A stretch of 64,000 nt of DNA from Octopus sinensis (lineage: Eukaryota), in contig NC_043000.1 in the NCBI RefSeq assembly GCF_006345805.1, positions 23,126,001 to 23,190,000 of the forward strand, in the 5' to 3' direction. A model generated the notes under the pieces. It did no database searches and was not told the origin of the DNA. It saw only the letters and a list, made by a program, of their open reading frames with translations. Of this stretch, positions 11,240-57,510 are shown in pieces; the stretch's first letter is position 1; the number at the start of each line of letters is the position of its first letter. Both the position numbers and the translations under genes were made by a program.

Positions 11240-11444
11240 TACTCTGAGTTCAAATCCTACCAAAATTGATCTTGCTTTTCACCCTTTTGGAGTCAATACA
11301 AGAATAGGGAGATCATTATCATCATCATCACGGACGCTAAACGATGATGATGATGAAGATGATGATGATGATCTCCCTATTCTTGTATTGACTCCAAAAG
11401 GGTGAAAAGCAAGATCAATTTTGGTAGGATTTGAACTCAGAGTA
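11240..11444. repeat. Perfect 77-bp inverted repeat (foldback) around an (ATC)n/(GAT)n spacer
   Basis: 11240-11316 is the exact reverse complement of 11368-11444. Confidence 0.95.
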
Positions 11445-17431: not shown

Positions 17432-19585
17432 GGTATAATGTAACCCAGTACAAACTTTTGCATGATTGGGCTGTCAAAGACTAAACCAATCCTCCTTGAT
17501 AAGGAGGAAGATTTTCATTGGATATGCTGCAGGATGAAAGGAAAAATCTGTCAAAGGACAGGTGAACTCAGTAAAGAATGCAGCTATCCAACAGCTGAGA
17601 GTGAGAGGCCCCTAGTCTTTGTTTAGACTTCTCTCTAGGAGAAAGGATTTCTGAGATAAACCTTCCTCCTGCCTCATTTTGAAACCAGAGATCTTGCTCT
17701 GGCTTGTTTCTGGATGATTTGGTTTTGAATGTGAGTCTTATCAATATTATGCAAGCTGTTATTGGTTTTGTGGAGGTGCATGGCTTAGTGGTTAGGGTGT
17801 CAGAGTCATGATCGTAAGATTGTGGTTTCGATTCCTGGACCGGGCGACGCATTGTGTGCTTGAGCAAAACACTTCATTTCACATTGCTCCAGTCCACTCA
17901 GCTGGCAAAAATGAGTAACACTGCGATGGACTGGCATCCCGTCCAGCTGGGGAACACATACGCCATTGAAACTGGGGAAACCAGGCCCATAAGCCTGGCT
18001 AGGCTTTAAAAGCGAGCATTTATTTTTTTTTTTGTTATTGGTTTTAAATTTCAGCATAAGCATTGCTGACAGCCATTGTCTTTAACATCTACGAAAAGAT
18101 AATATGTCAGTGATGATCATACTTGTCTACAAGTTGACAACCAATATGTGTGTGTGTATGATTCATTGCTCAAGTTTCCTATATAAGATATAACTAACAG
18201 CCACTGGCATAAATGGTCAACGTCAACAGGCTTTCAATGTTACGCTTAAAGTTTCCAGATGTTTCAGAAACTATAAATGCAGCGTAATCAAATTTACATA
18301 ATAACATTTGAGAATCTAATCTCAATATTATTCTACAGCAGAACTAAATGTGGCTCAATAATACATTATTTTTTTTTTTTTCAAGAAGCATTGGAGGCAA
18401 CTCTGAACATATTTCTGCCTTATTAAGACCTTATCAGTAAAGGATAGTCTTTTCTGTATTTGTCAGACTAATGAGGAAGGAATCTGCCAGTGGCATGTAA
18501 AAAGCACCTACCAATCATGGCTGTTGCCAGCCTCCTCTGGCTCCTGTGCCAGTGGCACATAAAAAGCACCCACTACACTCATGAAGTGGTTGGCGTTAGG
18601 AAGTGCATCCAGATGTAGAAACACTGCCAGATCAGACTGGAGCCGGGTGCAGCCTCCTGGCTTCCCAGACACGGTTGAACCATCCAACCCATGCTAGCAT
18701 GGAAAACAGAAGTTTAAACAATGATGATGATGACAAGGTGTGTGTGTGTGTATTCTATATATATATCATCATCATCATCATCATCGTTTAACGTCCGCTT
18801 TCCATGCTAGCATGGGTTGGACGGTTCAACTGGGGTCTGGGGAGCCCAAAGGCTGCACCAGGCCAGTCAGATCTGGCAGTGTTTCTACAGCTGGATGCAC
18901 TTCCTAACGCCAACCACTTCATGAGTGTAGTGGGTGCTTTTTATGTGCCACTGGCACAGGAGCCAGAGGAGGCTGGCAACACTCCGAGAGTGTGTATATA
19001 TATATATATATATATATACAAATAAGACCAATACCTTGTACATACACTTAGTGATTTTTTGATCATCAGCAAGTATGGTGAAATCTGTTCTTTGATGATG
19101 AGGCCATAATAAGATCAAAATATGTCTGTAGTTGTCTCTTTTATTGTGGCTAATATAAAAATATTTTTGTCATTTGCTAATATATTTTTACCCTCTCTTT
19201 ATAAATAATTCTGTTTTGCTTTGCAATGCTTTCTACATTAAATAATGTAACACTAATTCAAATATAGGTTTAAACGTATCGATATATTTTAAATACGTAC
19301 AGCCCTTCCCCTCTGTTGTTGCAAGGCACCTGCTTCTATCCTTCTGTCTCTTTGTCACACTCTAACCTTTCTTCCTCTGACACAAGTTCCCCCTCCTCAG
19401 ATGCCCTGCCCCTCTCATAATTCCTTGTCTTGTGAATTACTTGGTTACCCTGCCAGTGCTGGTGCCACGTTAAAAGTATCCAATCCACACTGTAATGTGG
19501 CTGGTGTTTTGAAGGGCATCCAGCTGTAAAAATCATGTCAAAACTAACTTCACGTGTGCTGGTGCCACCTTAGAAGCACTGAGTT

Positions 19586-24118: not shown

Positions 24119-25608
24119 TGACTGGAAACTGATTGGCTTGGCTTCTTTGTCATGTCCTGCCACTCCAGACCTGTCAACTTCATCATCGTATCCTGTTTTA
24201 TCAAATTTACAGTCATCATGTCCTATCACTCTGGCTCCGTTAACTTTGTCATTGTGTCCTGTTTTGTCGAATTTACAGTCATCACACCAAGCTACACAAG
24301 GCTCCACCACCTCACCAGTTGTTTCTTCCAGTCTGGATGATGACTCAGAGAGTGAGTATTTTCCTAGTTCAGACTCAGCGATGATGATATTCCAGTTAAT
24401 CAAAGGTACAGGCAGGCAGCAGTGAATGGTCCTGGACAACAGAATACCATGCGGTGACTGAGAGATAATTTTGTCGGATGGCATGGGTTTACTGGTATGC
24501 TTGGCATAAAGGCAAACCTTGAACATGGAAGCTCACCATTGGAAATCTTCCATGAGTTTTTAATGGATGAAATATTCCAGTATATAGCGGACGAAACAAA
24601 TGACTATGTTGGAAACCATCCCCAGCATGTCATACCTGGGCATGGTGGTGATTAGTTTCCAACCACAAGGGACGAAATCAAAGTTGTGCTTGCCCTGCTG
24701 ATTCTGATGGGCATTGTGAAGAAACTGACCCTGGTATCATATTGGAATTAGGATCCAGCCACATTGACACCTTTATTTCCAGAAACAATGCCACATGATC
24801 AATTTTTGGCACTTCTTTGAAATCTATATTTCAACTCAAGCAAACCAGGATGACACACTGCACAAAATAATCTTATCATTGACAAAGTGGCTGAAAATTT
24901 CAGAACAGTGTATGTCCCCACACAGGACATTTGCATGGATGAGAATTTGTGGAAATTCAAGGAAAAGCTCCGATTCAAACAATACAACATGACTAAGCAT
25001 GCCCACTTTGAAGTCAAGATTTATAGAGTATGCCAATCAACTGGCAGAGCCTGTGGGTACACATGGAATTACAAATTCTACACTGGTCAGGACAGACTGG
25101 AGCTTCCAGCATCTACTCTAGCATCAACTGATGTATTGTCGCTGAATGAAAACTGGTTTGACAAAGGCTACAATATTTATACGGACAACTGGTTTTCCAG
25201 TCCAGACCTCTTCTTGCAACTGCAGGCGAGGAGGAATAATGCCTGTGGGACTGTGAGGACACAGGAAAAACATGCTACCCAATCATCTCAAAATAAAACT
25301 TTGAAAGGAGGAAACAGTATACTGATGCACGATAGTAGCATTCTCACTCTAGTGTGGCATGACAAGAAAAACATCTGCATATTATCCACAATGCATTGTC
25401 AGTCTCTCTCCTTACTGCATGTTGAAGGGATATGGACATTTCCCATAACTGTTTCCCACCACCACCAAGAAGACAAATGCTTCAAAGAGATGCACAGTAT
25501 GTAAAGTAAAGGAAAATGTAAGAAACCAGATACCATTGTTCACGATGTGATATGCCACTGAGTGTTGTACCTTCTTTTGATCTCTACCACACTGAAGTCA
25601 ATTTTTGA
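24119..25608 (+). pseudogene. Decayed piggyBac (PGBD4-like, DDE_Tnp_1_7) transposase in the host gene's last intron
   Basis: ORF 24887-25504 has DICMDENLWKFK, FKQY...K...VKIY and YTDNWFSS, GTVR, WHDKK motifs. Upstream frames give EIKVVLALLILMGIVKK; the C-terminal Cys-rich remnant reads TRYHCSRCDMPLSVVPSFDLYHT. There are stops and frameshifts, the third catalytic Asp region is missing, and no clear TIRs were found. Confidence 0.9.
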
Positions 25609-45850: not shown

Positions 45851-47369
45851 GAGGAATTGAAGAATTATAAAAAATGTGTTGAGACGAGGATAAAAAAAAA
45901 ACCTCTATGTGATCGTTTAACCTGTTAGAAATAGCTTTAAATCTTCAAATTAAACTTTACCGTCCAACACTATACATTGTATAATGTACACCTTAGGACG
46001 TGTTGAAAAAAATAAGACGAGACGACCGTAGTTGGTTAGAACGTCTCTGATCATAAGTCTCCATAATCAGAGCTGGCCGGGGGTTAAACTACTATTATTG
46101 ATCACTGACTATTGATCACATGTTCTATGAGGTTATGCAATTTTTCTTGTACGCTAATTGTCGAATCTACACCATTAGGTAATTATATTCTGGAGTAAAG
46201 GGGAGAGCTGGTACAATGGTTATAGTGTGTCTGACAAAATGTTTAGTGCTGAAGCCAACTTAGCGTTACATCCCTTCGAGATCGATAAAATAAGTACCAG
46301 TTCGAGTACAGGAATCGATGTAACCAAGTTCCTTCTCCCCTTATAAAAATTGTTGGTTTTGTGCCAAAACTAAAGAAACATTGTATTCTAGCATCAAGAT
46401 ATTGAGGCGCGGGTCTAACTATGCCGCAGTAAATGAAACCTTATTAGGTCAAAACCACGTTCTTTCCATTCTCGTATCTTCTTTCTCGGTGTTTTAGAGT
46501 CATGCAATAAATAATATTCTTATATAGAATTAATTGATCCGCATACTTTAATGTTACGTAATCTCACTGGCTATCAATGTACATGTGAAACATTATTCCC
46601 AAGCATGCACGTAAAGAAAAATGTCTTTATATGTGTACAAAATAACCATCAAAGATGCATATAAAAGTTAGCCTTATACACACGTGTGCATGCAAAATAA
46701 ATACGTATCCAAAACAATTTTCATCTGTTCACATAAAAGACTTTTTAAAGATGTGTCTCAAATAGCTTTCAACATATATTAAGTCAACTGGAGAACCTTT
46801 AGGTAGTCATCCGGCCTGTTAGAAACAGCACCCATATCTTCCTCATATCACTCCCTACCGCCTTAAATAAGAAAGGAACATATTAGGTAATGAGCCGTGT
46901 GTATATATTATTAAAAAGACGAGATGGTCACGAGTGGAAGGTCTTTGAAATAAGGTCTGTTCGATCAGAGTTGACTCGTGGTTAAACAACAACAAATCAA
47001 TGTTCATATCTGTGTATCCAATAACACAATCAGACCCAGATTGCTTTTGATCAATTTGCTTTCATAAGTGAAAGGTGAAACATCAGTCTGTAAAAGTGTT
47101 TCGATGGATTTATTTATCCCCCTATCCTTCGGTTATCTTACACACAGACACTATTGCACGCACACAGAGCTATTCTTACGCACAGTAGACAGATCAATTA
47201 CATCGTACATTACACAAACATATACCATCATACGTGTTCACATATCAGACACATACATAAAACCTCATCGTTTTAAATTGATCAGCGAAAATCCCCAAAG
47301 AGACAGAGATAAAAGAAAAGCCAGCGATATTGAGGTTGTGGTTCATAGACAGGGAATTTACATAAAGGA

Positions 47370-48130
47370 GCGGAGAGAGGGAGAGGAAATAGGGAAAGGA
47401 AGAGAAGACAAGACTGATGAGAGTGGAAAGAGCAGTAAAATCAAAGGAAAACGTACGAAAAAAGGAAGGGATGGAGAGAATTAAAAGGGGAAAGTGAGAG
47501 GAGAATAGAAAGAGGGAGTGGGAGCATAGTAAAATATATTAAAAGCCAGAGCTGAGTAGGGAAAAAGAAAAGAAAAGATTATAAGAGAAGAGGGAAAGAG
47601 ACAAAAGATGTGGGGGCTGCTGAGTGAGGGAAGACAATGTACAGGCAAAGAATGAGAAAAGGTAGCAGGAAAGTAAAAGAGAAGATGAATAAATATGGCA
47701 GGAATGAGAGACTGAAGAAGAACGAAAGACAAGAAAAGTGATGAATTAAGAAAAGAAAGGATGAAGGAGAAATAGGGGCAGAATCGGTGGGGTGGGGAGA
47801 GAGAAAAAATCAAATATAGGGAGAGTAAGAGAGGAATATATAAAAGAAAAAAAGACAGTTAAGTGGGAATGTTAGAGTGCGTGTGTAGAGAGGGTGGAGT
47901 GGCATAGAAAAGGCGGCGGGGGGGGGGGGGTAGAATGATTGACAAAAGATGAAAGAGAGGAAAGAGGAGTATTAAGAGAAAGAAAGGAAACAGGAGAATA
48001 AAAGGAGGAGAAGAAAGAGATGCGATGAGGTGGGGGGGGAGAAGAAAGGGTAAAGGAAGTTAAGCGATGGAGGAAGATGCTACAGAAGGGGGAAAGGTGG
48101 GAAATAAGAGAAGCAGTAATGAAATAGAGA
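47370..48130. repeat. Long low-complexity purine-rich (GA) tract on the + strand
   Basis: Strong strand asymmetry read directly. A shorter one lies at 5030-5170. Confidence 0.85.
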
Positions 48131-48203
48131 CAGATTAAAAATAAAAGAAAATAAATAAACAATAATTGGTAGAGAAAGCGAAGCCGAAATAATAGAGAGT
48201 CAC

Positions 48204-48930
48204 CATCAATAGATCGATGATCTTTTTGTTGCAAGCCGGTTGGGTGGTTCGTTTCCTATGGCTACATTGCATGTTTACGACATGTCTGCTACATGTCTGC
48301 ACTGAAAAGGAATTGATCAACCCTGTGCTCCCCGAGCCAGTGTGTTTTTCTCTCTCATTCATTGAACAGCTGGCAACGAATGAATGAATGAATGAACGAA
48401 GCATCAACACGAATGAAAATTGCTCTACAGCTGTGTGCGTGTGTGCGTCTTTCCCTGTGAAGGAGTCTCGCAGTGCGTGGAGACGTGCGTGTGTGCAAAG
48501 AAAGAAGAAAAAAAAAAGAAAAAGAGGCAAACGATTGTGTATGTTGGCTGTATGAATGAATGCAAATACTTTGAGCCTGACTCTCTCTCTCTTGATCTTT
48601 CTCTCCCCCTCTCTCGCTCATGTGTTCTCTTGCCTCTCGCTTTATATATATATTCTCTGTTTATATGTTTTCATTTATGTAAAATACTTTCTAGTTATCT
48701 TATTATTTTGTTTCTAACAGTAGTAATAACACACATGCATCGTATGTATGTGTATGTATATATAAATGGATCTATCTTTTTCTCTCTCTCTACACACACA
48801 CGCACGCACATGTATGTAATGCTCATCTATACTTTGACAACTCGGAAGATGAAACTTCGTTGTTTTCCTTTTTCACGTGCGTTCTCGTTGTCTTTCTCAT
48901 CACATGCACGCGCGCATAACTGCTTCGCGG
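48204..48930 (-). promoter_or_regulatory. CpG-island-like region with a candidate minus-strand first exon
   Basis: High CpG at 48400-49200; donor TGATG|GTGACT at 48204/48203, followed by ~800 bp of pyrimidine-rich minus-strand sequence. Confidence 0.35.
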
Positions 48931-49200
48931 TACTACTAGCGAACAGTGGACCCCGTGCGCGCACACGCGTAGTCGCGCATCCGCGCTAGCTAGTCTCAAG
49001 TAGTCGATCCTACAACGACTGACTAGCAAAGTAAATAAAACACAAAATAAATAATTTTTTTTACACAAAGTAAATAATTTTTGTTAAACAAAGTAAATAA
49101 CACAAAAACACAAAGTAAGGATCGACTAGTCATGACTAGCTTGCGCGGATGCGCGAGTACGCGAGAGCGCGCACCGGGACCACTGTTCTCAAGTAGTGCC
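48929..49200. repeat. CpG-rich inverted repeat, 80-bp core arms, AT-rich spacer
   Basis: 48932-49011 pairs with 49197-49118 at 68 of 80 positions without gaps. Confidence 0.95.
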
Positions 49201-50404
49201 CTGTTTACATAGGAGGAAGGCGTTTACACTCATGAAATTCGCATGCCTTCTAAAAACTGGTGAGTTTGATGCTGTCGTTGTTTATCTTGAACAGCTGTCC
49301 GTCTAAGATCGCAGATGGGGAATTGGAGGTATATAGGCGAGGAGGAAGTTCCAGTGGGACAACGGTTGGGGAAGTAAGAATTAGGTTAATTGTAGGCCTG
49401 GGGGGTAAGGACACACAGCATGGATGGCCGGAAAAGGAGAGAGAAGTATGTCAGGTGGGCTTAAGTGTTGAGTGGTATGCACCAAACCTTGCTTTAAGGA
49501 GTGGAAGCCATTACAGTAACAGTAGAAAAGTGACAAGACAGCATGTCGATGGGTTTGATGTTGACATTTTTAAGTACGGTGCAGGTGTGGCTGTGTGGGG
49601 GAGAAGCTTGCTTCCCAACCATGTGGTCTTGGGTTCACTCCCACTTCACAGCACACTGGTCATGTGTCTTTTCTTATAGGCCTGGATTACAGTACAGGAT
49701 GTTTAAAAAGTCTCTCCGCAGTAAGTATTTAATGGGTTTTGGGTGATTCTTGTACACTGATCCTTTAGTTGCTCCCCAGAAGAAGAAAAAAAGTCTGGCG
49801 GTGTTAAATCAGGTGATCTTGGTGGCCAAAGCCCCTTTGAAATAATCCGTTCACTGAAAAACTCTTGAAGTAGCACCATGGTGATGCGCAGGATGAAAAA
49901 ATTCACTGGGGAGAAACTTTTTGAACACCCTGTAGAAGATGCTTGCCAGAACTTTGTAAGTGGATTTGACAGAAATGGAAACAAGCTTGAGGATTACATA
50001 CATGTGTGTGTATAAGTGTGTGTGTGTGTGAGAAAGAGAGTTTGAGTGTATGTGTGTGTGCATGTGCATGTATATGTACCCTTGAGCCAGTGGCACGTAA
50101 AAAGCACCATCCGAACGTGGCCGATACCAGTGCCACCTTGATGGGCGTCCATGCCGGTGGCATGTAAAAAGCACCAACCAATCGTGGCTGTTGCTAGCCT
50201 CCTCTGGCCCCTGTGCAGGTGGAACGTAAAAAGTACCCACTACACTCACAGAGTGGTTGGCGTTAGGAAGGGCATCCAGCTGTAGAAACATTGCCAGATC
50301 AGACGGAGCCTGATGCAGCCTCCTGGCTTCCCAGACCCCGGTCGAACCGTCCAACCCATGCTAGCATGGAAGATGCTTGCCAGAACACAGGGAAATATTA
50401 CATT

Positions 50405-50812
50405 ACTCTTTACTCTTTTTTACTCTTTTTCTTGTTTCAGTCATTTGACTGCGGCCATGCTGGAGCACCACCTTTAGTCGAGCAAATCGACCCCGGGACT
50501 TATTCTTTGTAAGCCCAGTACTTATTCCATCGGTCTCTTTTGCCGAACCGCTAAGTAACGGGGACGTAAACACAAAAGCATCGGTTGTCAAGCAATGCTA
50601 GGGGGACAAACACACACACATACACACACATATATATATATATATACATATATACGACAGGCTTCTTTCAGTTTCCGTCTACCAAATCCACTCACAAGGC
50701 ATTGGTCGGCCCGGGACTATAGCAGAAGACACTTGCCCAAGATACCACGCAGTGGGACTGAACCTGGAACCATGTGGTTGGTTAGCAAGCTACTTACCAC
50801 ACAGCCACTCCT
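50405..50812 (-). mobile_element. SINE family A
   Basis: Reverse-complement match to the copies above. Confidence 0.85.
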
Positions 50813-52809
50813 TACTTGGAAACAAGTAAGGGTTGGTGACGTGAAGGCCATCAGGCCTTAGAAAAATTGCTTCAACAGATTCCGACTGATCCATGCAAAC
50901 ATGGAAAAACAGAGGTTAAAAGATGTTAAATAACTCCATGTCAGTCAGTCTTCTGTTGCTAGTTTCAATCATTGAGCAACTGCAGTCATTCAAGGGTTTT
51001 GGTTAATCTTATCAACCCTAGTGGTTTCCTTAGTATTGAATGGCTTGATATAAATGGACATAACATTGGTTTCAGATCTTTTCGGTTTTAATGGCAGTTT
51101 TTAACATAATTTCTAGGTAACTAAAAAATTTTAAACTTCGTATACTGGTTGAATGTGTTTATAAAACAACTTTTTCTCTTGGCTTTATTGAGAAAATTCT
51201 ATAGTTTGTAAGATATTTGTTGTGTTTTTTTCTTCAATTTCTGCAATTTCAACCAATGAATGACGCCTAATGAGTTAAAAAACATTCTGTGCCGTATGAA
51301 TGTGCCCCTCGTTTAAGAAACAGATTGGGTTTATTTACATTTGTGAAGAAAAAAAGATACCCTTCCCTCCACCCCTAACCCTAAAACAGATTGAAATGCA
51401 ACAGATCAATACTAGGGTCATAATTATGGGTGACAATTTCATATGACACCGCTAGAAAAAACTGCTGTTCAAACCGAAAAGATCCTTGGTTTGCACTGAT
51501 AAATATAAACACAAACTTTCTCTCTCTCTCTCTCTCACATACACACACACACACATATACACGCACACACACATGCACACACACACATACATGCATGCAT
51601 TCTAGTTGGTCCTAGCAAATACAAAAGTTTTTATCATCATCATCATCATCATCATTTAATGCCTGCTTTCCATACTAGCATGGGTTGGACGATTTGACTG
51701 AGGACTGGCGAACCAGATGGCTGCACCAGGCTCCAATCTTGATCTGGCAGAGTTTCTACAGCTTGATGTCCTTCCTAACACCAACCACTCCGAGGGTGTA
51801 GTGGGTGCTTTTACATGCCACCGGCACAGGGCCAGTCAGGCGGTACTGGCAACGACCTCACTCGAATCTTTTACACATGCCACCGGCACAGGTTTAGTCT
51901 GTAGAAAAGAAGATGAGATCTTGGTGCCACCATGAAAATGATTGATATGCAGAAAAGGAAGCTACAAGCAGTGATGTTTGTATCATTTTCCCTGTTAACA
52001 TATCACCCGCAGGGTTTGTGCTTTCAAAGATGTGTGGAATAAGTATCCCTTACTTAAAGCACAAGTAAGGGTTAGTAACAGGAAGGGTATACTCCTGTAA
52101 AATGATGCATTAATACTATATTCATTTACCCCATGCTGAAAAGCATCATCATCGTTTAACATCCATTTTCCGTGCTAGCACGGGTTGGACAGTTCGACCG
52201 GGGTCTGAGAAGCCAGGAGGCTGCACCAGGCTCCAGTCTGATCTGGCAGTGTTTCTACAGCAGGATGCCCTTCCTAATGCCTAGGAACATCCTTGTTATA
52301 ATGAAGCTAATGCAAGTATTTCTGAATATATATAACCAAAACTCTAAACAAATTTTGGGATAAATTTTAAATAATATTAAAATCTGTAAAAATTCCAATT
52401 TTAATATATTTTAATAAAAATTTGCTCTTATTGTCCATTTTCAGTCCATAAATACAATTTGTTGAAAACGTTTTTGGCTAATATGAGCAATTATATATAG
52501 ACTCTGGTTATATGTGGCTGAGAAGCTGAACAAAAATTGTAAAAAGTGGAATTGTTTTAGTGAAAAGCAACACTACCACCTATGGTACATAGTAATTAGT
52601 GTTAATAAAAATTTTCAGTTTGAACACATCCAATAGTTTTGATTCAACAAAGCCTACTAAATTAATATTTCATATTTTTATGCTATATTGAATCAGAAAA
52701 ACTGAAATTTAAATTTTAAATTCGAGATAAAAATCAATTCAAGTGTATGATATATAATTTGAGATTGTAGCTTTTGTATCTGGCATAGCTGTGTATCAAT
52801 TGGATGTTA

Positions 52810-53350
52810 TCGTTCACAAATTATATTTTTCTTCTTCTTCTTAATCCTTTTTGCCTCTTGTGGAGCATAGGGCCTCAACAGCTGTTTTCCACTTTTGTGG
52901 TCATTGGCGTGTTTCTTGGCTGCTTCCCATGTCAGGCCAGTGGTCCTGAGCTCATCCAAAATGCTCCACTTCCATGTCAGCTTCAGGTGTCCTCACTTCC
53001 TTTTCCCTTGCGGATTCCAGTCAAGTGCTTGTCACGTTGCATTTGAGGGTTCTTTCCGCAGTGTGCGTCTGATCCATCTCCATTTCCTTCATCTAATCTG
53101 AACATGTATGGGCTCCTGGTTGGCCCTTTTCCACAGGTCGGTGTTTGGCGCTCTGTCAAACCACTTCAGATGGAGGATCTGCCGGAAACATTTGTTGATG
53201 AAAGTTTGGATCTTCTTGTAGTTGCTGCAGGTGGCTCTCCATGTTTCAGATCCCCTCAAAAGAACAGATTTTATGTTTGAATTAAATAAGCGGATTTTAG
53301 TTCAAGTTGAGATGGCAGTGGACTCCCTATACTCATAAACCTGTTATAGT
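52810..53350 (-). mobile_element. RTE-clade LINE 3' fragment
   Basis: Minus frame TKIRLFNSNIKSVLLRGSETW...KIQTFINKCFRQILHLKW...RKWRWI...ALDWNPQGKRK, with a (GAA)n tail. Confidence 0.8.
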
Positions 53351-56929: not shown

Positions 56930-57510
56930 TTCATTAGGAATTGCTTCAAATCCTGAAAGAGAGGCCAATCTGTGATGGTGAGTTTTTGAGATTAGATATA
57001 ACGGTACAAGATATGGAGAACATCTGGAAGAGTTGTTGTGTGTCAATGCTGCTGAAGATAAGGCTACTTCGGGTTGCCGCTTTCTCTATTGCAACGTATG
57101 GCTGCGATTCGTGGACAATGTTGAAGGCAGATGAGAAAAGAGGGAGTGCTTTTGAAATGTAGTGTTACCGTGGAATCCTTAGCTTGTCGTGGACGGAGAG
57201 AAGGACGAACAACTGGGTACTAGAAAAGCTCGGTTGCGAGATGACGCTTCGGCGAAACATCATGAAGTGGAAGCTATGGTTCTTTGGCCACATCATGCGC
57301 CGGGATGGACTTGAGCGAACGATCATAACTGGCAAGGTGAACGGCAGATGTAAAAGAGGCAGACCAACCACTTCTTGGCTGAAAGACATCGCAGCCACAG
57401 GATTGTCTTTATTCTCAGCTGTCCATGGGGTAAAGGACAGGAGAAGGTGGTAAGACATCGTGATCACCACAGCATCGCATAGTGCAACACCTGACCAGGA
57501 TGATGATGAT
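56930..57510 (+). mobile_element. RTE/BovB-like LINE 3' fragment
   Basis: IATYGCDSWTMLKADEKR..AFEM and LWFFGHIMRRDGLERTIITGKVNGRCKRGRP, with a (GAT)n tail. Confidence 0.85.

What the first reader, a model, noticed from the sequence alone, without database searches (positions are those of the whole stretch)
48929..49200. CpG-rich inverted repeat whose mismatches are mostly same-base pairs
Seen: 80-bp arms pair gap-free at 68/80. Of the 12 mismatches, 9 are X:X (4 A:A, 2 T:T, 2 G:G, 1 C:C), 1 is C:T and only 2 are transition-type, despite ~15 CpGs per arm. If that class had probability 1/3, 9 or more of 12 has a binomial p of about 0.004 (hand calculation, post hoc). The 61.1 kb inverted repeat in this window shows 1/15 same-base and 10/15 transitions. 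No TSD was found. The arms contain sub-palindromes (GTGCGCGCAC, CTAGTCATGACTAG) and alternating purine-pyrimidine runs. Inference: same-base mismatches destabilise both strands equally and avoid wobble pairs. That points to constraint on a DNA cruciform or paired protein sites, selective correction of other mismatches, or a polishing artefact. It sits at the edge of a promoter-like region.
Basis: partly seen in the sequence, partly recalled or inferred. Interest (0 to 1): 0.7.

Follow-up and report, generated by a model that had tools for sequence, protein, structure and literature searches.

The report
CpG-rich hairpin repeat with same-base mismatches
A single 272-base stretch that can fold back on itself differs between its two halves almost only by A/T and C/G swaps, unlike every other inverted repeat nearby. 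With one copy and no second genome to compare, the cause stays open.

Summary
Nine of 13 mismatches are same-base (4 A:A, 2 T:T, 2 G:G, 1 C:C), meaning A<->T or C<->G differences between the arms.

Other inverted repeats in the window show 12-15% of this class. That gives P about 3e-6 to 5e-6; among 43 comparable repeats the next best P is 0.135. CpG counts are 11 and 10 per arm, not about 15, but this is still the most CpG-dense spot in the window.

I also rejected minute inversions, compensatory flips within an arm, a hidden direct repeat, an RNA family and vector or viral origin.

No other copy, orthologue or independent assembly could be reached. No target-site duplication was found, and no gene or promoter evidence.

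My best reading, at low confidence: a local inverted duplication of a CpG-rich patch in which weak<->strong differences between the arms are filtered out, while same-base mispairs persist. Rivals are chance, hairpin-stall mutagenesis, family-level asymmetry and artefact.

Overall this is an unexplained single-locus outlier of moderate interest.

The parts
48929..49011 (.). Left arm (L) of the inverted repeat: 83 nt, 60% GC, 11 CpG.
49012..49117 (.). Spacer or loop: 106 nt, 21% GC, A-rich on the + strand, not itself palindromic.
49118..49200 (.). Right arm (R): 83 nt, 60% GC, 10 CpG. It pairs gap-free with L at 70/83.
49040..49100 (+). 23-nt tandem repeat in the loop (ACACAAAGTAAATAATTTTTGTT, 2.7 copies, 92% matches). 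It carries four RYAAAYA motifs on the + strand; a fifth, on the - strand, lies at 49202.
48958..48985 (.). Four CGCG blocks at exactly 8-nt spacing (48958, 48966, 48974, 48982). No mismatch falls inside a block; the mismatches 48963, 48965, 48972 and 48987 lie in the spacers between or beside them.
   Evidence: read
49144..49171 (.). Mirror image of the four CGCG blocks in the right arm.
   Evidence: follows from the gap-free pairing
48932..48942 (+). Outer 11-mer of L, ACTACTAGCGA. It is one of four related 11-mers that bound the two arms.
48994..49004 (-). Inner 11-mer of L (TCTCAAGTAGT, which is ACTACTTGAGA on the - strand). It is identical, in direct orientation, to the outer 11-mer of R.
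49124..49134 (+). Inner 11-mer of R, ACTAGTCATGA. It lies inside the perfect 14-nt palindrome 49126-49139 and differs from its partner at 4 clustered sites (48996-49000). This could be one complex event.
49187..49197 (-). Outer 11-mer of R (TCTCAAGTAGT). On the - strand the end reads CACTACTTGAGAA.
48860..48928 (.). CpG-rich left flank outside the repeat (7 CpG in 69 nt, observed/expected 1.92). The right flank 49201-49300 is CpG-poor (0.69). L is therefore continuous with a CpG-rich patch and R is not.

Best explanation
What it is: a solitary 272-bp imperfect palindrome in unique, transposon-surrounded intergenic or intronic DNA of an octopus-like genome. It most likely arose as a local inverted duplication of the right-hand 83 bp of a small CpG-rich, apparently unmethylated patch. 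L is continuous with that patch and R is not. Either strand can fold into one long, very stable hairpin.

How the mismatch pattern arose (inferred): a filter acts on differences between the arms. A difference that swaps a weak (A/T) for a strong (G/C) base gives a G.T, A.C, A.G or C.T mispair when the arms pair. Pairing could occur in a hairpin on single-stranded DNA, in a cruciform, or in an arm-to-arm heteroduplex. Such mispairs are recognised and removed. Known glycosylase-type short-patch repair handles G.T and A.G, and every weak<->strong difference shows one of these two on one of the two strands. A<->T and C<->G differences give only A:A/T:T or G:G/C:C, for which no such enzyme is known, so they persist. 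Selection on the weak/strong pattern would have the same effect.

Shown: the repeat, its folding potential, the mismatch classes and their rarity elsewhere in the window. Inferred: the origin, the pairing in vivo and the filter.
For: - The repeat and its mismatch classes are as described.
- Both strands fold as one hairpin: -83.1 and -80.5 kcal/mol, z -13.6 and -12.0.
- Relative to the average divergence of 17 other inverted repeats in the window, A<->T differences are 7.2 times and C<->G differences 5.1 times more frequent per site, while weak<->strong differences are 0.4 times as frequent. Two chemically unrelated classes are raised by a similar factor and all four other classes are lowered together. 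A filter on weak<->strong changes predicts this; a single polymerase error signature does not.
- The weak/strong pattern is kept at 79 of 83 columns.
- There are no indels in 83 nt, and no CpG-to-TpG/CpA difference despite 21 CpGs.
- The outlier status is strong: P about 3e-6 to 5e-6, with the next repeat at 0.135.
- In the human germline, variants at inverted repeats tend to extend or perfect the repeat. The authors attribute this to mismatch repair or template switching in hairpins (bioRxiv 10.1101/2022.02.08.479604).
- Arm-to-arm GC-biased correction is established for large palindromes (PMC3723533, abstract seen).
Against: - Twelve other close inverted repeats in the same window (loop up to 300 nt, some with 52-57% GC) have an ordinary spectrum: 45 transitions, 8 complement-type, 13 other. 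No general hairpin-linked filter is visible, so this one would need a special reason, such as arm GC content, an unmethylated state or age.
- CpG richness extends 60-70 bp beyond the left arm, so it is not a product of arm pairing.
- Four of 13 mismatches are of the class the filter should remove. On the other strand, three of them would be G.T or A.G.
- If time alone produced 9 complement-type differences, the arms would be about six times older than typical repeats here. Roughly 50 substitutions and several indels would then have been erased, which is a strong claim for an 83-bp repeat with a 106-nt spacer.
- General mismatch repair, as I recall it, handles A:A and G:G well.
- There is only one locus, 13 events, a pattern defined after looking, and no orthologue or read data.
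Confidence: 0.3

Rival explanations
1. Chance. This is an ordinary young inverted duplication or transposon remnant whose 13 arm differences happen to be mostly A<->T and C<->G. The pattern was noticed after the fact.
For: - There are only 13 events, possibly about 10 independent ones, because 48996-49000 looks like a single complex change.
- The hypothesis was formed on the same data, and the number of windows and patterns the scan looked at is unknown.
- Under a uniform 1/3 null, P is only 0.009.
- No second feature sets the element apart: no TSD, no relatives, no RNA family, no thermodynamic signature.
Against: - Against the spectrum actually seen in this window, P is 3e-6 to 5e-6.
- The element is the lone outlier among 43 repeats.
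- The same element is independently the most CpG-dense spot of the window.
Confidence: 0.25
2. Structure-induced mutagenesis. Replication stalls at this very stable GC-rich hairpin and error-prone polymerases (Pol zeta/Rev1-like) take over. They make C:C and G:G misinsertions and short complex changes, so the bias is in the input of mutations and not in their removal.
For: - In yeast, GC->CG transversions and complex mutations within 6 nt are the Pol zeta/Rev1 signature and map to the bases of GC-rich hairpins (PMC3874155).
- Purified Pol zeta has unusually high C-dCMP and G-dGMP error rates (PMC1635245).
- The element has 3 C<->G differences and one 4-site cluster within 5 nt.
- 48954 and 48965 directly flank the 10-nt palindrome 48955-48964.
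- No great age and no erased indels need to be assumed.
Against: - Six of the nine same-base mismatches are A<->T, which that signature does not predict.
- Pol zeta's commonest error is A-dCMP, a transition, yet transitions are depleted here.
- Other close repeats show no such bias.
- In the human germline, variants at inverted repeats concentrate in spacers, and Z-DNA motifs show no excess.
Confidence: 0.13
3. Functional constraint. The arms are a working element, such as paired protein sites, a CpG platform or a cruciform. Its function depends on the CGCG blocks and on the weak/strong pattern (minor-groove or shape readout, local melting), so only A<->T and C<->G swaps are tolerated.
For: - CGCG blocks at exact 8-nt spacing carry no mismatch.
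- 10 of 11 CpGs are kept between the arms and the weak/strong pattern is kept at 79/83.
- 4-nt palindromes are enriched about twofold over dinucleotide shuffles (P 0.008 and 0.002).
- The loop and right flank hold five RYAAAYA motifs against 0.5 expected.
- From established knowledge: A:T and T:A, and G:C and C:G, look alike in the minor groove.
Against: - Sequence-specific protein sites do not normally tolerate A<->T swaps, and no known reader needs a weak/strong pattern kept base by base over 83 bp.
- There is no thermodynamic signature for a cruciform.
- The 106-nt spacer is unfavourable for extrusion.
- No gene, promoter or RNA evidence was found nearby.
- Conservation could not be checked.
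Confidence: 0.12
4. Transposon end structure. The element is a non-autonomous DNA transposon (MITE or foldback, possibly CACTA-like). Its left and right terminal repeats differ at fixed positions in the whole family, so the mismatches were inherited and not made in place.
For: - The size, the long terminal inverted repeats and the AT-rich interior are MITE-like.
- Four related 11-mers bound the arms in alternating orientation.
- The right end reads CACTACTTGAGAA on the - strand. That matches 10 of 13 positions of the En/Spm terminus as I recall it.
- The window is rich in transposons.
Against: - No target-site duplication exists at any boundary.
- The left end reads TACTAC, not CACTAC.
- There is no second copy in 64 kb, even with a profile search.
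- CpG richness continues into the left flank, which fits a local duplication better than an insertion.
- Family-level asymmetry would still not explain why the differences are of the complement type.
Confidence: 0.12
5. Assembly or polishing artefact in a GC-rich, hairpin-forming stretch that is hard to sequence.
For: - Strong hairpins and GC-rich DNA cause recurrent sequencing errors (discussed in bioRxiv 10.1101/2022.02.08.479604).
- No reads were available to check.
Against: - The arms are gap-free over 83 nt, whereas long-read consensus errors are mostly indels.
- Mis-mapping of reads between arms would make the arms more alike, not different.
- I know of no pipeline error that yields complement substitutions. 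Strand-specific base-calling errors would hit both arms symmetrically (inference).
Confidence: 0.07

Closest known systems
Imperfect (quasi-)palindromes shaped by hairpin-templated correction or short template switching
   Same: It is a closely spaced inverted repeat with nested sub-palindromes. At several mismatch sites one arm carries a perfect sub-palindrome where the other does not: GTGCGCGCAC, ACGCGT and CTAGCTAG in L, and CTAGTCATGACTAG in R.
   Different: Template switching makes arms more alike and has no preference for base class. Here the standing differences are strongly of one class. Intra-arm compensation was tested and not found.
Large palindromes kept alike by GC-biased arm-to-arm gene conversion (human Y palindrome P6, PMC3723533)
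   Same: The two arms stay similar, and weak<->strong differences are the ones a GC-biased process acts on.
   Different: Those arms are kilobases long and more than 99.9% identical, and conversion tracts remove all kinds of difference. This repeat is 83 bp, 84% identical, and keeps one class of difference.
MITEs and foldback elements, including CACTA/En-Spm-like ends
   Same: About 270 bp, long terminal inverted repeats, AT-rich middle, no coding capacity, one end reading CACTAC.
   Different: No target-site duplication, no other copy in the window, unusually CpG-rich arms in a CpG-poor genome, and CpG richness that continues outside the left arm.
Hairpins of CNG triplet repeats
   Same: Stems with regularly placed same-base mispairs (A:A, T:T, G:G, C:C) between C:G pairs.
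   Different: In triplet repeats the same-base mispairs follow from a direct repeat of an odd palindromic unit. Here the mismatch sites are not centres of local odd palindromes, and L and R share no direct-repeat relation beyond one 11-mer.
Pol zeta/Rev1 mutagenesis at hairpin bases in yeast (PMC3874155)
   Same: GC->CG changes and clustered multi-base changes next to GC-rich hairpin-forming sequence.
   Different: Most differences here are A<->T, and the expected A->G transitions are rare. The effect has been shown in yeast replication mutants, not in an animal germline.

Membership tests
DNA transposon / MITE (generic) | Terminal inverted repeats and small size without coding capacity | tested here: met
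   83-nt arms, 272 bp in total, only short spurious ORFs
DNA transposon / MITE (generic) | Target-site duplication flanking the ends | tested here: not met
   No 3-10 nt direct repeat at any boundary within +/-15 nt. The best match is a 4-mer at off-end positions.
DNA transposon / MITE (generic) | Multiple dispersed copies in the genome | tested here: inconclusive
   No second copy in the 64-kb window by blastn or nhmmer. The source genome is not searchable with these tools.
CACTA / En-Spm superfamily | Both termini 5'-CACTA...; 3-bp (or 2-bp) target-site duplication | tested here: not met
   The right end reads CACTAC on the - strand and the left end reads TACTAC. The flanks CGG and CCC do not match. 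The consensus terminus is recalled from memory.
Foldback element | Long inverted termini built of tandem subrepeats | tested here: inconclusive
   Four CGCG blocks lie at 8-nt spacing, but Tandem Repeats Finder reports no array in the arms.
CpG island (length >=200, GC >=50%, observed/expected >=0.6) | All three thresholds met together | tested here: not met
   48860-49200 is 341 bp with observed/expected 1.72, but GC is 45% because of the AT-rich loop. The arms alone are 60% GC but only 83 bp.
Known structured RNA / miRNA or hairpin-RNA precursor (Rfam) | Score at or above the family's gathering threshold | tested here: not met
   No hit at gathering thresholds. The best relaxed hit is MIR841 at 33.7 bits against 200 required.
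Cruciform-forming inverted repeat | Stable intrastrand stems on both strands | tested here: met
   -83.1 and -80.5 kcal/mol, z -13.6 and -12.0
Cruciform-forming inverted repeat | Extrusion in supercoiled DNA or in vivo (favoured by a short spacer) | not testable with these tools
   The spacer is 106 nt, which is long, but it is 21% GC and so easily melted. Nuclease or 2D-gel assays are needed.
Minute inversions at small hairpins | Each complement-type change sits at the centre of a local palindrome | tested here: not met
   Flanking palindrome half-lengths at the nine sites are 0, 2, 1, 0, 0, 1, 0, 0, 1.

The most novel reading that the evidence does not exclude
The arms of a hairpin-forming, unmethylated CpG-rich palindrome are proofread against each other in the germline. 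The proofreading pathway sees only weak:strong mispairs (G.T, A.C, A.G, C.T) and is blind to same-base mispairs. The element then keeps its GC and CpG content and its weak/strong pattern for a very long time while A<->T and C<->G swaps accumulate. That would be a genomic footprint of intrastrand pairing in vivo and of the blind spots of short-patch repair.
Probability: 0.15. Interest if true: 0.75.

Novelty: new variant of a known kind. Interest (0 to 1): 0.4.

Why it matters
Whether inverted repeats actually pair within a strand in animal germlines is usually argued from instability or from experiments in microbes, and so is what repair then does to them. A standing mismatch spectrum that keeps the weak/strong pattern but not base identity would be a passive record of such pairing and of which mispairs escape correction. 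It could also explain how a small CpG-rich palindrome survives in a CpG-poor genome. If the pattern is chance or a family feature, this is an ordinary orphan foldback. The useful lesson would then be that 13 sites at one locus cannot carry a mechanism.

Tried and rejected
1. Minute inversions or odd-palindrome centres as the source of complement-type changes. The nine sites are not palindrome centres.
2. Base-pair flips that preserve helices inside an arm. Only one candidate pair was found (48938/48987, a 6-bp helix), and this is expected by chance (P=0.48).
3. A hidden direct-repeat relation between L and R, as in triplet-repeat hairpins. Only the 11-mer TCTCAAGTAGT is shared, and its score lies within the shuffle range.
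4. Selection for equal or special hairpin destabilisation. No signature was found.
5. A general hairpin-linked bias in this genome region. Twelve other close repeats are ordinary.
6. A known RNA family or tRNA-derived element. None was found.
7. Foreign, viral, plasmid or vector origin:
   - No hit in viral contigs, plasmids or phages.
   - The metagenome hit L001 is a bare 21-33-nt match in 64% GC DNA, which I read as chance.
   - The prokaryote hit L002 is a 21-mer in an acidobacterial (Granulicella) contig. It was not examined further because the script failed on it, but it is probably the same kind of chance hit.
8. Relatives or independent assemblies through spurious ORFs:
   - Four exact look-ups found nothing.
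   - Two homology searches found nothing.
9. A host gene in the window that could lead to orthologous loci. Pfam finds only a piggyBac transposase fragment and nothing in the other ORFs of 75 aa or more.
10. Target-site duplications for hAT, Tc1/mariner, CACTA, piggyBac and similar families. None was found.

Full report
**The object.** Positions 48929-49011 and 49118-49200 form a gap-free inverted repeat of 83 nt at 84% complementarity, with 106 nt between the arms. The arms are 60% GC with 11 and 10 CpGs. The spacer is 21% GC and A-rich on the + strand. It holds 2.7 copies of a 23-nt tandem unit. Extension beyond either end fails at once.

Both DNA strands fold as a single long hairpin: -83.1 and -80.5 kcal/mol, against about -35 for shuffles, z -13.6 and -12.0. 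The RNA version does the same.

**The observation.** I count 13 mismatches:
- Nine same-base: A:A at 48938, 48950, 48963 and 48965; C:C at 48954; G:G at 48972 and 49000; T:T at 48987 and 48996.
- One C:T at 48940.
- C:A at 48997 and A:C at 48998.
- T:G at 48931.

The only correction is the CpG count, which is 11 and 10 rather than about 15. CpG observed/expected is still 1.3-1.5 against 0.42 for the window, and 48860-49200 is the most CpG-dense place in the 64 kb.

**Is it more than chance?** A same-base mismatch means the arms differ by A<->T or C<->G.
- In 17 other inverted repeats of the window this class makes up 41 of 291 differences, or 14%.
- In my own scan of 65 repeats it is 77 of 523, or 15%.
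- After allowing for the arms' base composition the expectation is 12.5%.
- The probability of 9 or more of 13 is then 3e-6 to 9e-6.
- Among 43 repeats with at least five mismatches, this one has P=4.7e-6 and the next has 0.135.
- Under a flat one-third null, P is 0.009.

The pattern was defined after looking and rests on 13 events. The four sites at 48996-49000 may be a single event. I do not know how many windows the scan read. Within this window the outlier is clear, but across a whole genome a few such cases could arise by chance.

**Another way to state the pattern.** The weak/strong (A,T / G,C) pattern is kept at 79 of 83 columns. Compared with the average divergence of the control repeats, A<->T differences are 7.2-fold and C<->G 5.1-fold more frequent per site, and weak<->strong differences are 0.4-fold. 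There are no indels, and no CpG-to-TpG or CpA difference. The four CGCG blocks sit at exactly 8-nt spacing (48958, 48966, 48974, 48982) and carry no mismatch.

**Ideas tested and dropped.**
- Same-base sites are not centres of small palindromes, so minute inversions do not explain them.
- Flips of base pairs inside intra-arm helices would give pairs of complement-type differences. Only one such pair exists (48938/48987), as expected by chance.
- L and R have no direct-repeat relation beyond the 11-mer TCTCAAGTAGT, at 48994-49004 and 49187-49197.
Random mismatch identities at the same sites give the same total stability and the same strand difference.
- Twelve other close repeats (loop up to 300 nt, arms up to 57% GC) have an ordinary spectrum of 45/8/13. 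Whatever acts here is not a general property of hairpin-capable repeats in this region.

**Identity.**
- There is no second copy in the window, by blastn or by a profile of the two arms.
- No Rfam family reaches threshold; the best hit is 33.7 bits against 200. There is no tRNA.
- Nothing matches in viral contigs, plasmids or phages.
- The metagenome hit is a bare 21-33-nt match in 64% GC DNA. The prokaryote hit is a 21-mer in a Granulicella contig that I did not examine further. I read both as chance.
- ORFs over the element have no exact or related entries in the protein collections. I therefore could not reach an independent assembly, a paralogue or an orthologue.
- The surrounding 47000-49577 is unique in the window, and dispersed repeats start at 49578.
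- The window is transposon-rich. It holds a piggyBac transposase fragment and no recognisable host exon. I found nothing to support a promoter.
- The left arm is continuous with 60-70 bp of further CpG-rich DNA (observed/expected 1.92), while the outer flank of the right arm is CpG-poor at 0.69. This asymmetry fits an inverted duplication of part of an existing CpG-rich patch better than the insertion of a transposon with two ends.
- The - strand of the right end reads CACTACTTGAGAA, which resembles a CACTA terminus as I recall it. However, the left end reads TACTAC and there is no duplication of the target, so I do not file the element there.

**Mechanism.** Three kinds of cause could give the pattern.
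- *A filter.* It removes weak<->strong differences when the arms pair, because each such difference shows a G.T or A.G mispair on one strand. Short-patch glycosylase repair is known for these mispairs (established knowledge). A:A, T:T, G:G and C:C have no such enzyme. This explains why two chemically unrelated classes rise together and the other four fall together, and why there are no indels. It needs a long history and a reason why neighbouring repeats are not affected. I rank it first at 0.3.
- *A biased input.* In yeast, Pol zeta and Rev1 make GC->CG changes and short complex mutations at the bases of GC-rich hairpins (PMC3874155). Pol zeta has high C-dCMP and G-dGMP error rates (PMC1635245). 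This fits three sites and the cluster. It does not fit the six A<->T sites or the lack of transitions.
- *Selection on the weak/strong pattern or on paired sites.* This fits the untouched CGCG blocks and the twofold excess of 4-nt palindromes. It lacks any known reader of such a pattern.

Human germline data show that inverted repeats mutate mainly in the spacer and tend to become more perfect, with no class bias reported. I therefore found no precedent for the pattern. Chance (0.25), family-level asymmetry of a transposon (0.12) and artefact (0.07) remain.

**Verdict.** The cruciform-stability rationale is not supported. Selective correction is possible but unproven. This is an unexplained, statistically strong but single-locus outlier. 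Read pile-ups, a genome BLAST and orthologous sites would settle most of it, and none of these was within reach here.

Noticed in passing
window 24854-25501 (+): Fragment of a piggyBac-type transposase (Pfam DDE_Tnp_1_7, E=3.6e-27, profile positions 108-284 of 349). It is truncated and not an intact gene.
   Followed up: partly
window 49706-49993 (-): An ORF piece containing ...FSERIISKGLWPPRSPDLTPPDFF..., which I recognise from memory as the C-terminal part of a Tc1/mariner-like transposase. Pfam gave no hit. It lies 500 bp from the inverted repeat, and no matching terminal repeat was found.
   Followed up: partly
window 53092-53301 (-), 56938-57159 (+), 57163-57450 (+): ORF pieces that look like tails of LINE-type reverse transcriptase proteins. 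There was only a sub-threshold Pfam hit (DUF6451, 26.7 bits against 28) for the first.
   Followed up: partly
window 11240-11330 / 11354-11444 and 18522-18640 / 18863-18981: Two nearly perfect close inverted repeats (91 nt and 119 nt, 98% complementary, loops of 23 and 222 nt). They are probably young foldbacks or head-to-head repeat insertions.
   Followed up: no
   Followed up: yes
window 49031-49099 and 49202-49208: Four RYAAAYA motifs (GTAAATA, ATAAATA; forkhead-like consensus as I recall it) on the + strand of the loop and one TGTTTAC just right of the repeat. That is five against 0.5 expected from shuffles, but four of them are copies within the tandem repeat.
   Followed up: partly
window 48994-49004 and 49187-49197: Identical 11-mer TCTCAAGTAGT at the inner end of the left arm and the outer end of the right arm, in direct orientation. 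With 48932-48942 and 49124-49134, each arm is bounded by an inverted pair of related 11-mers.
   Followed up: partly
window 48929-49011 and 49118-49200: The arms are enriched about twofold in 4-nt palindromes (GTAC, CTAG, GCGC, CGCG, CCGG, CATG, TCGA, GATC) over dinucleotide shuffles (P 0.008 and 0.002). At 9 of 13 mismatch sites only one arm's variant lies in such a palindrome.
   Followed up: partly
window 47300-48230, including a G13 run at 47918-47930: Long purine-rich (AG) low-complexity tract just upstream of the element. GC skew is +0.23 and AT skew +0.22 for 46-48 kb.
   Followed up: no
window 48901-48918 and 48955-48971: Two alternating purine-pyrimidine runs of 17-18 nt with CG content (Z-DNA-prone on paper). 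The run in the left arm is broken in the right arm by the two A<->T differences at 48963 and 48965.
   Followed up: no
window 49578-49682 and 50083-50909: Dispersed repeats present in 4 and 15-19 copies within the window (SINE-like; translated pieces such as LPNHVVLGSLPLH recur). They give most of the window's other inverted repeats.
   Followed up: partly
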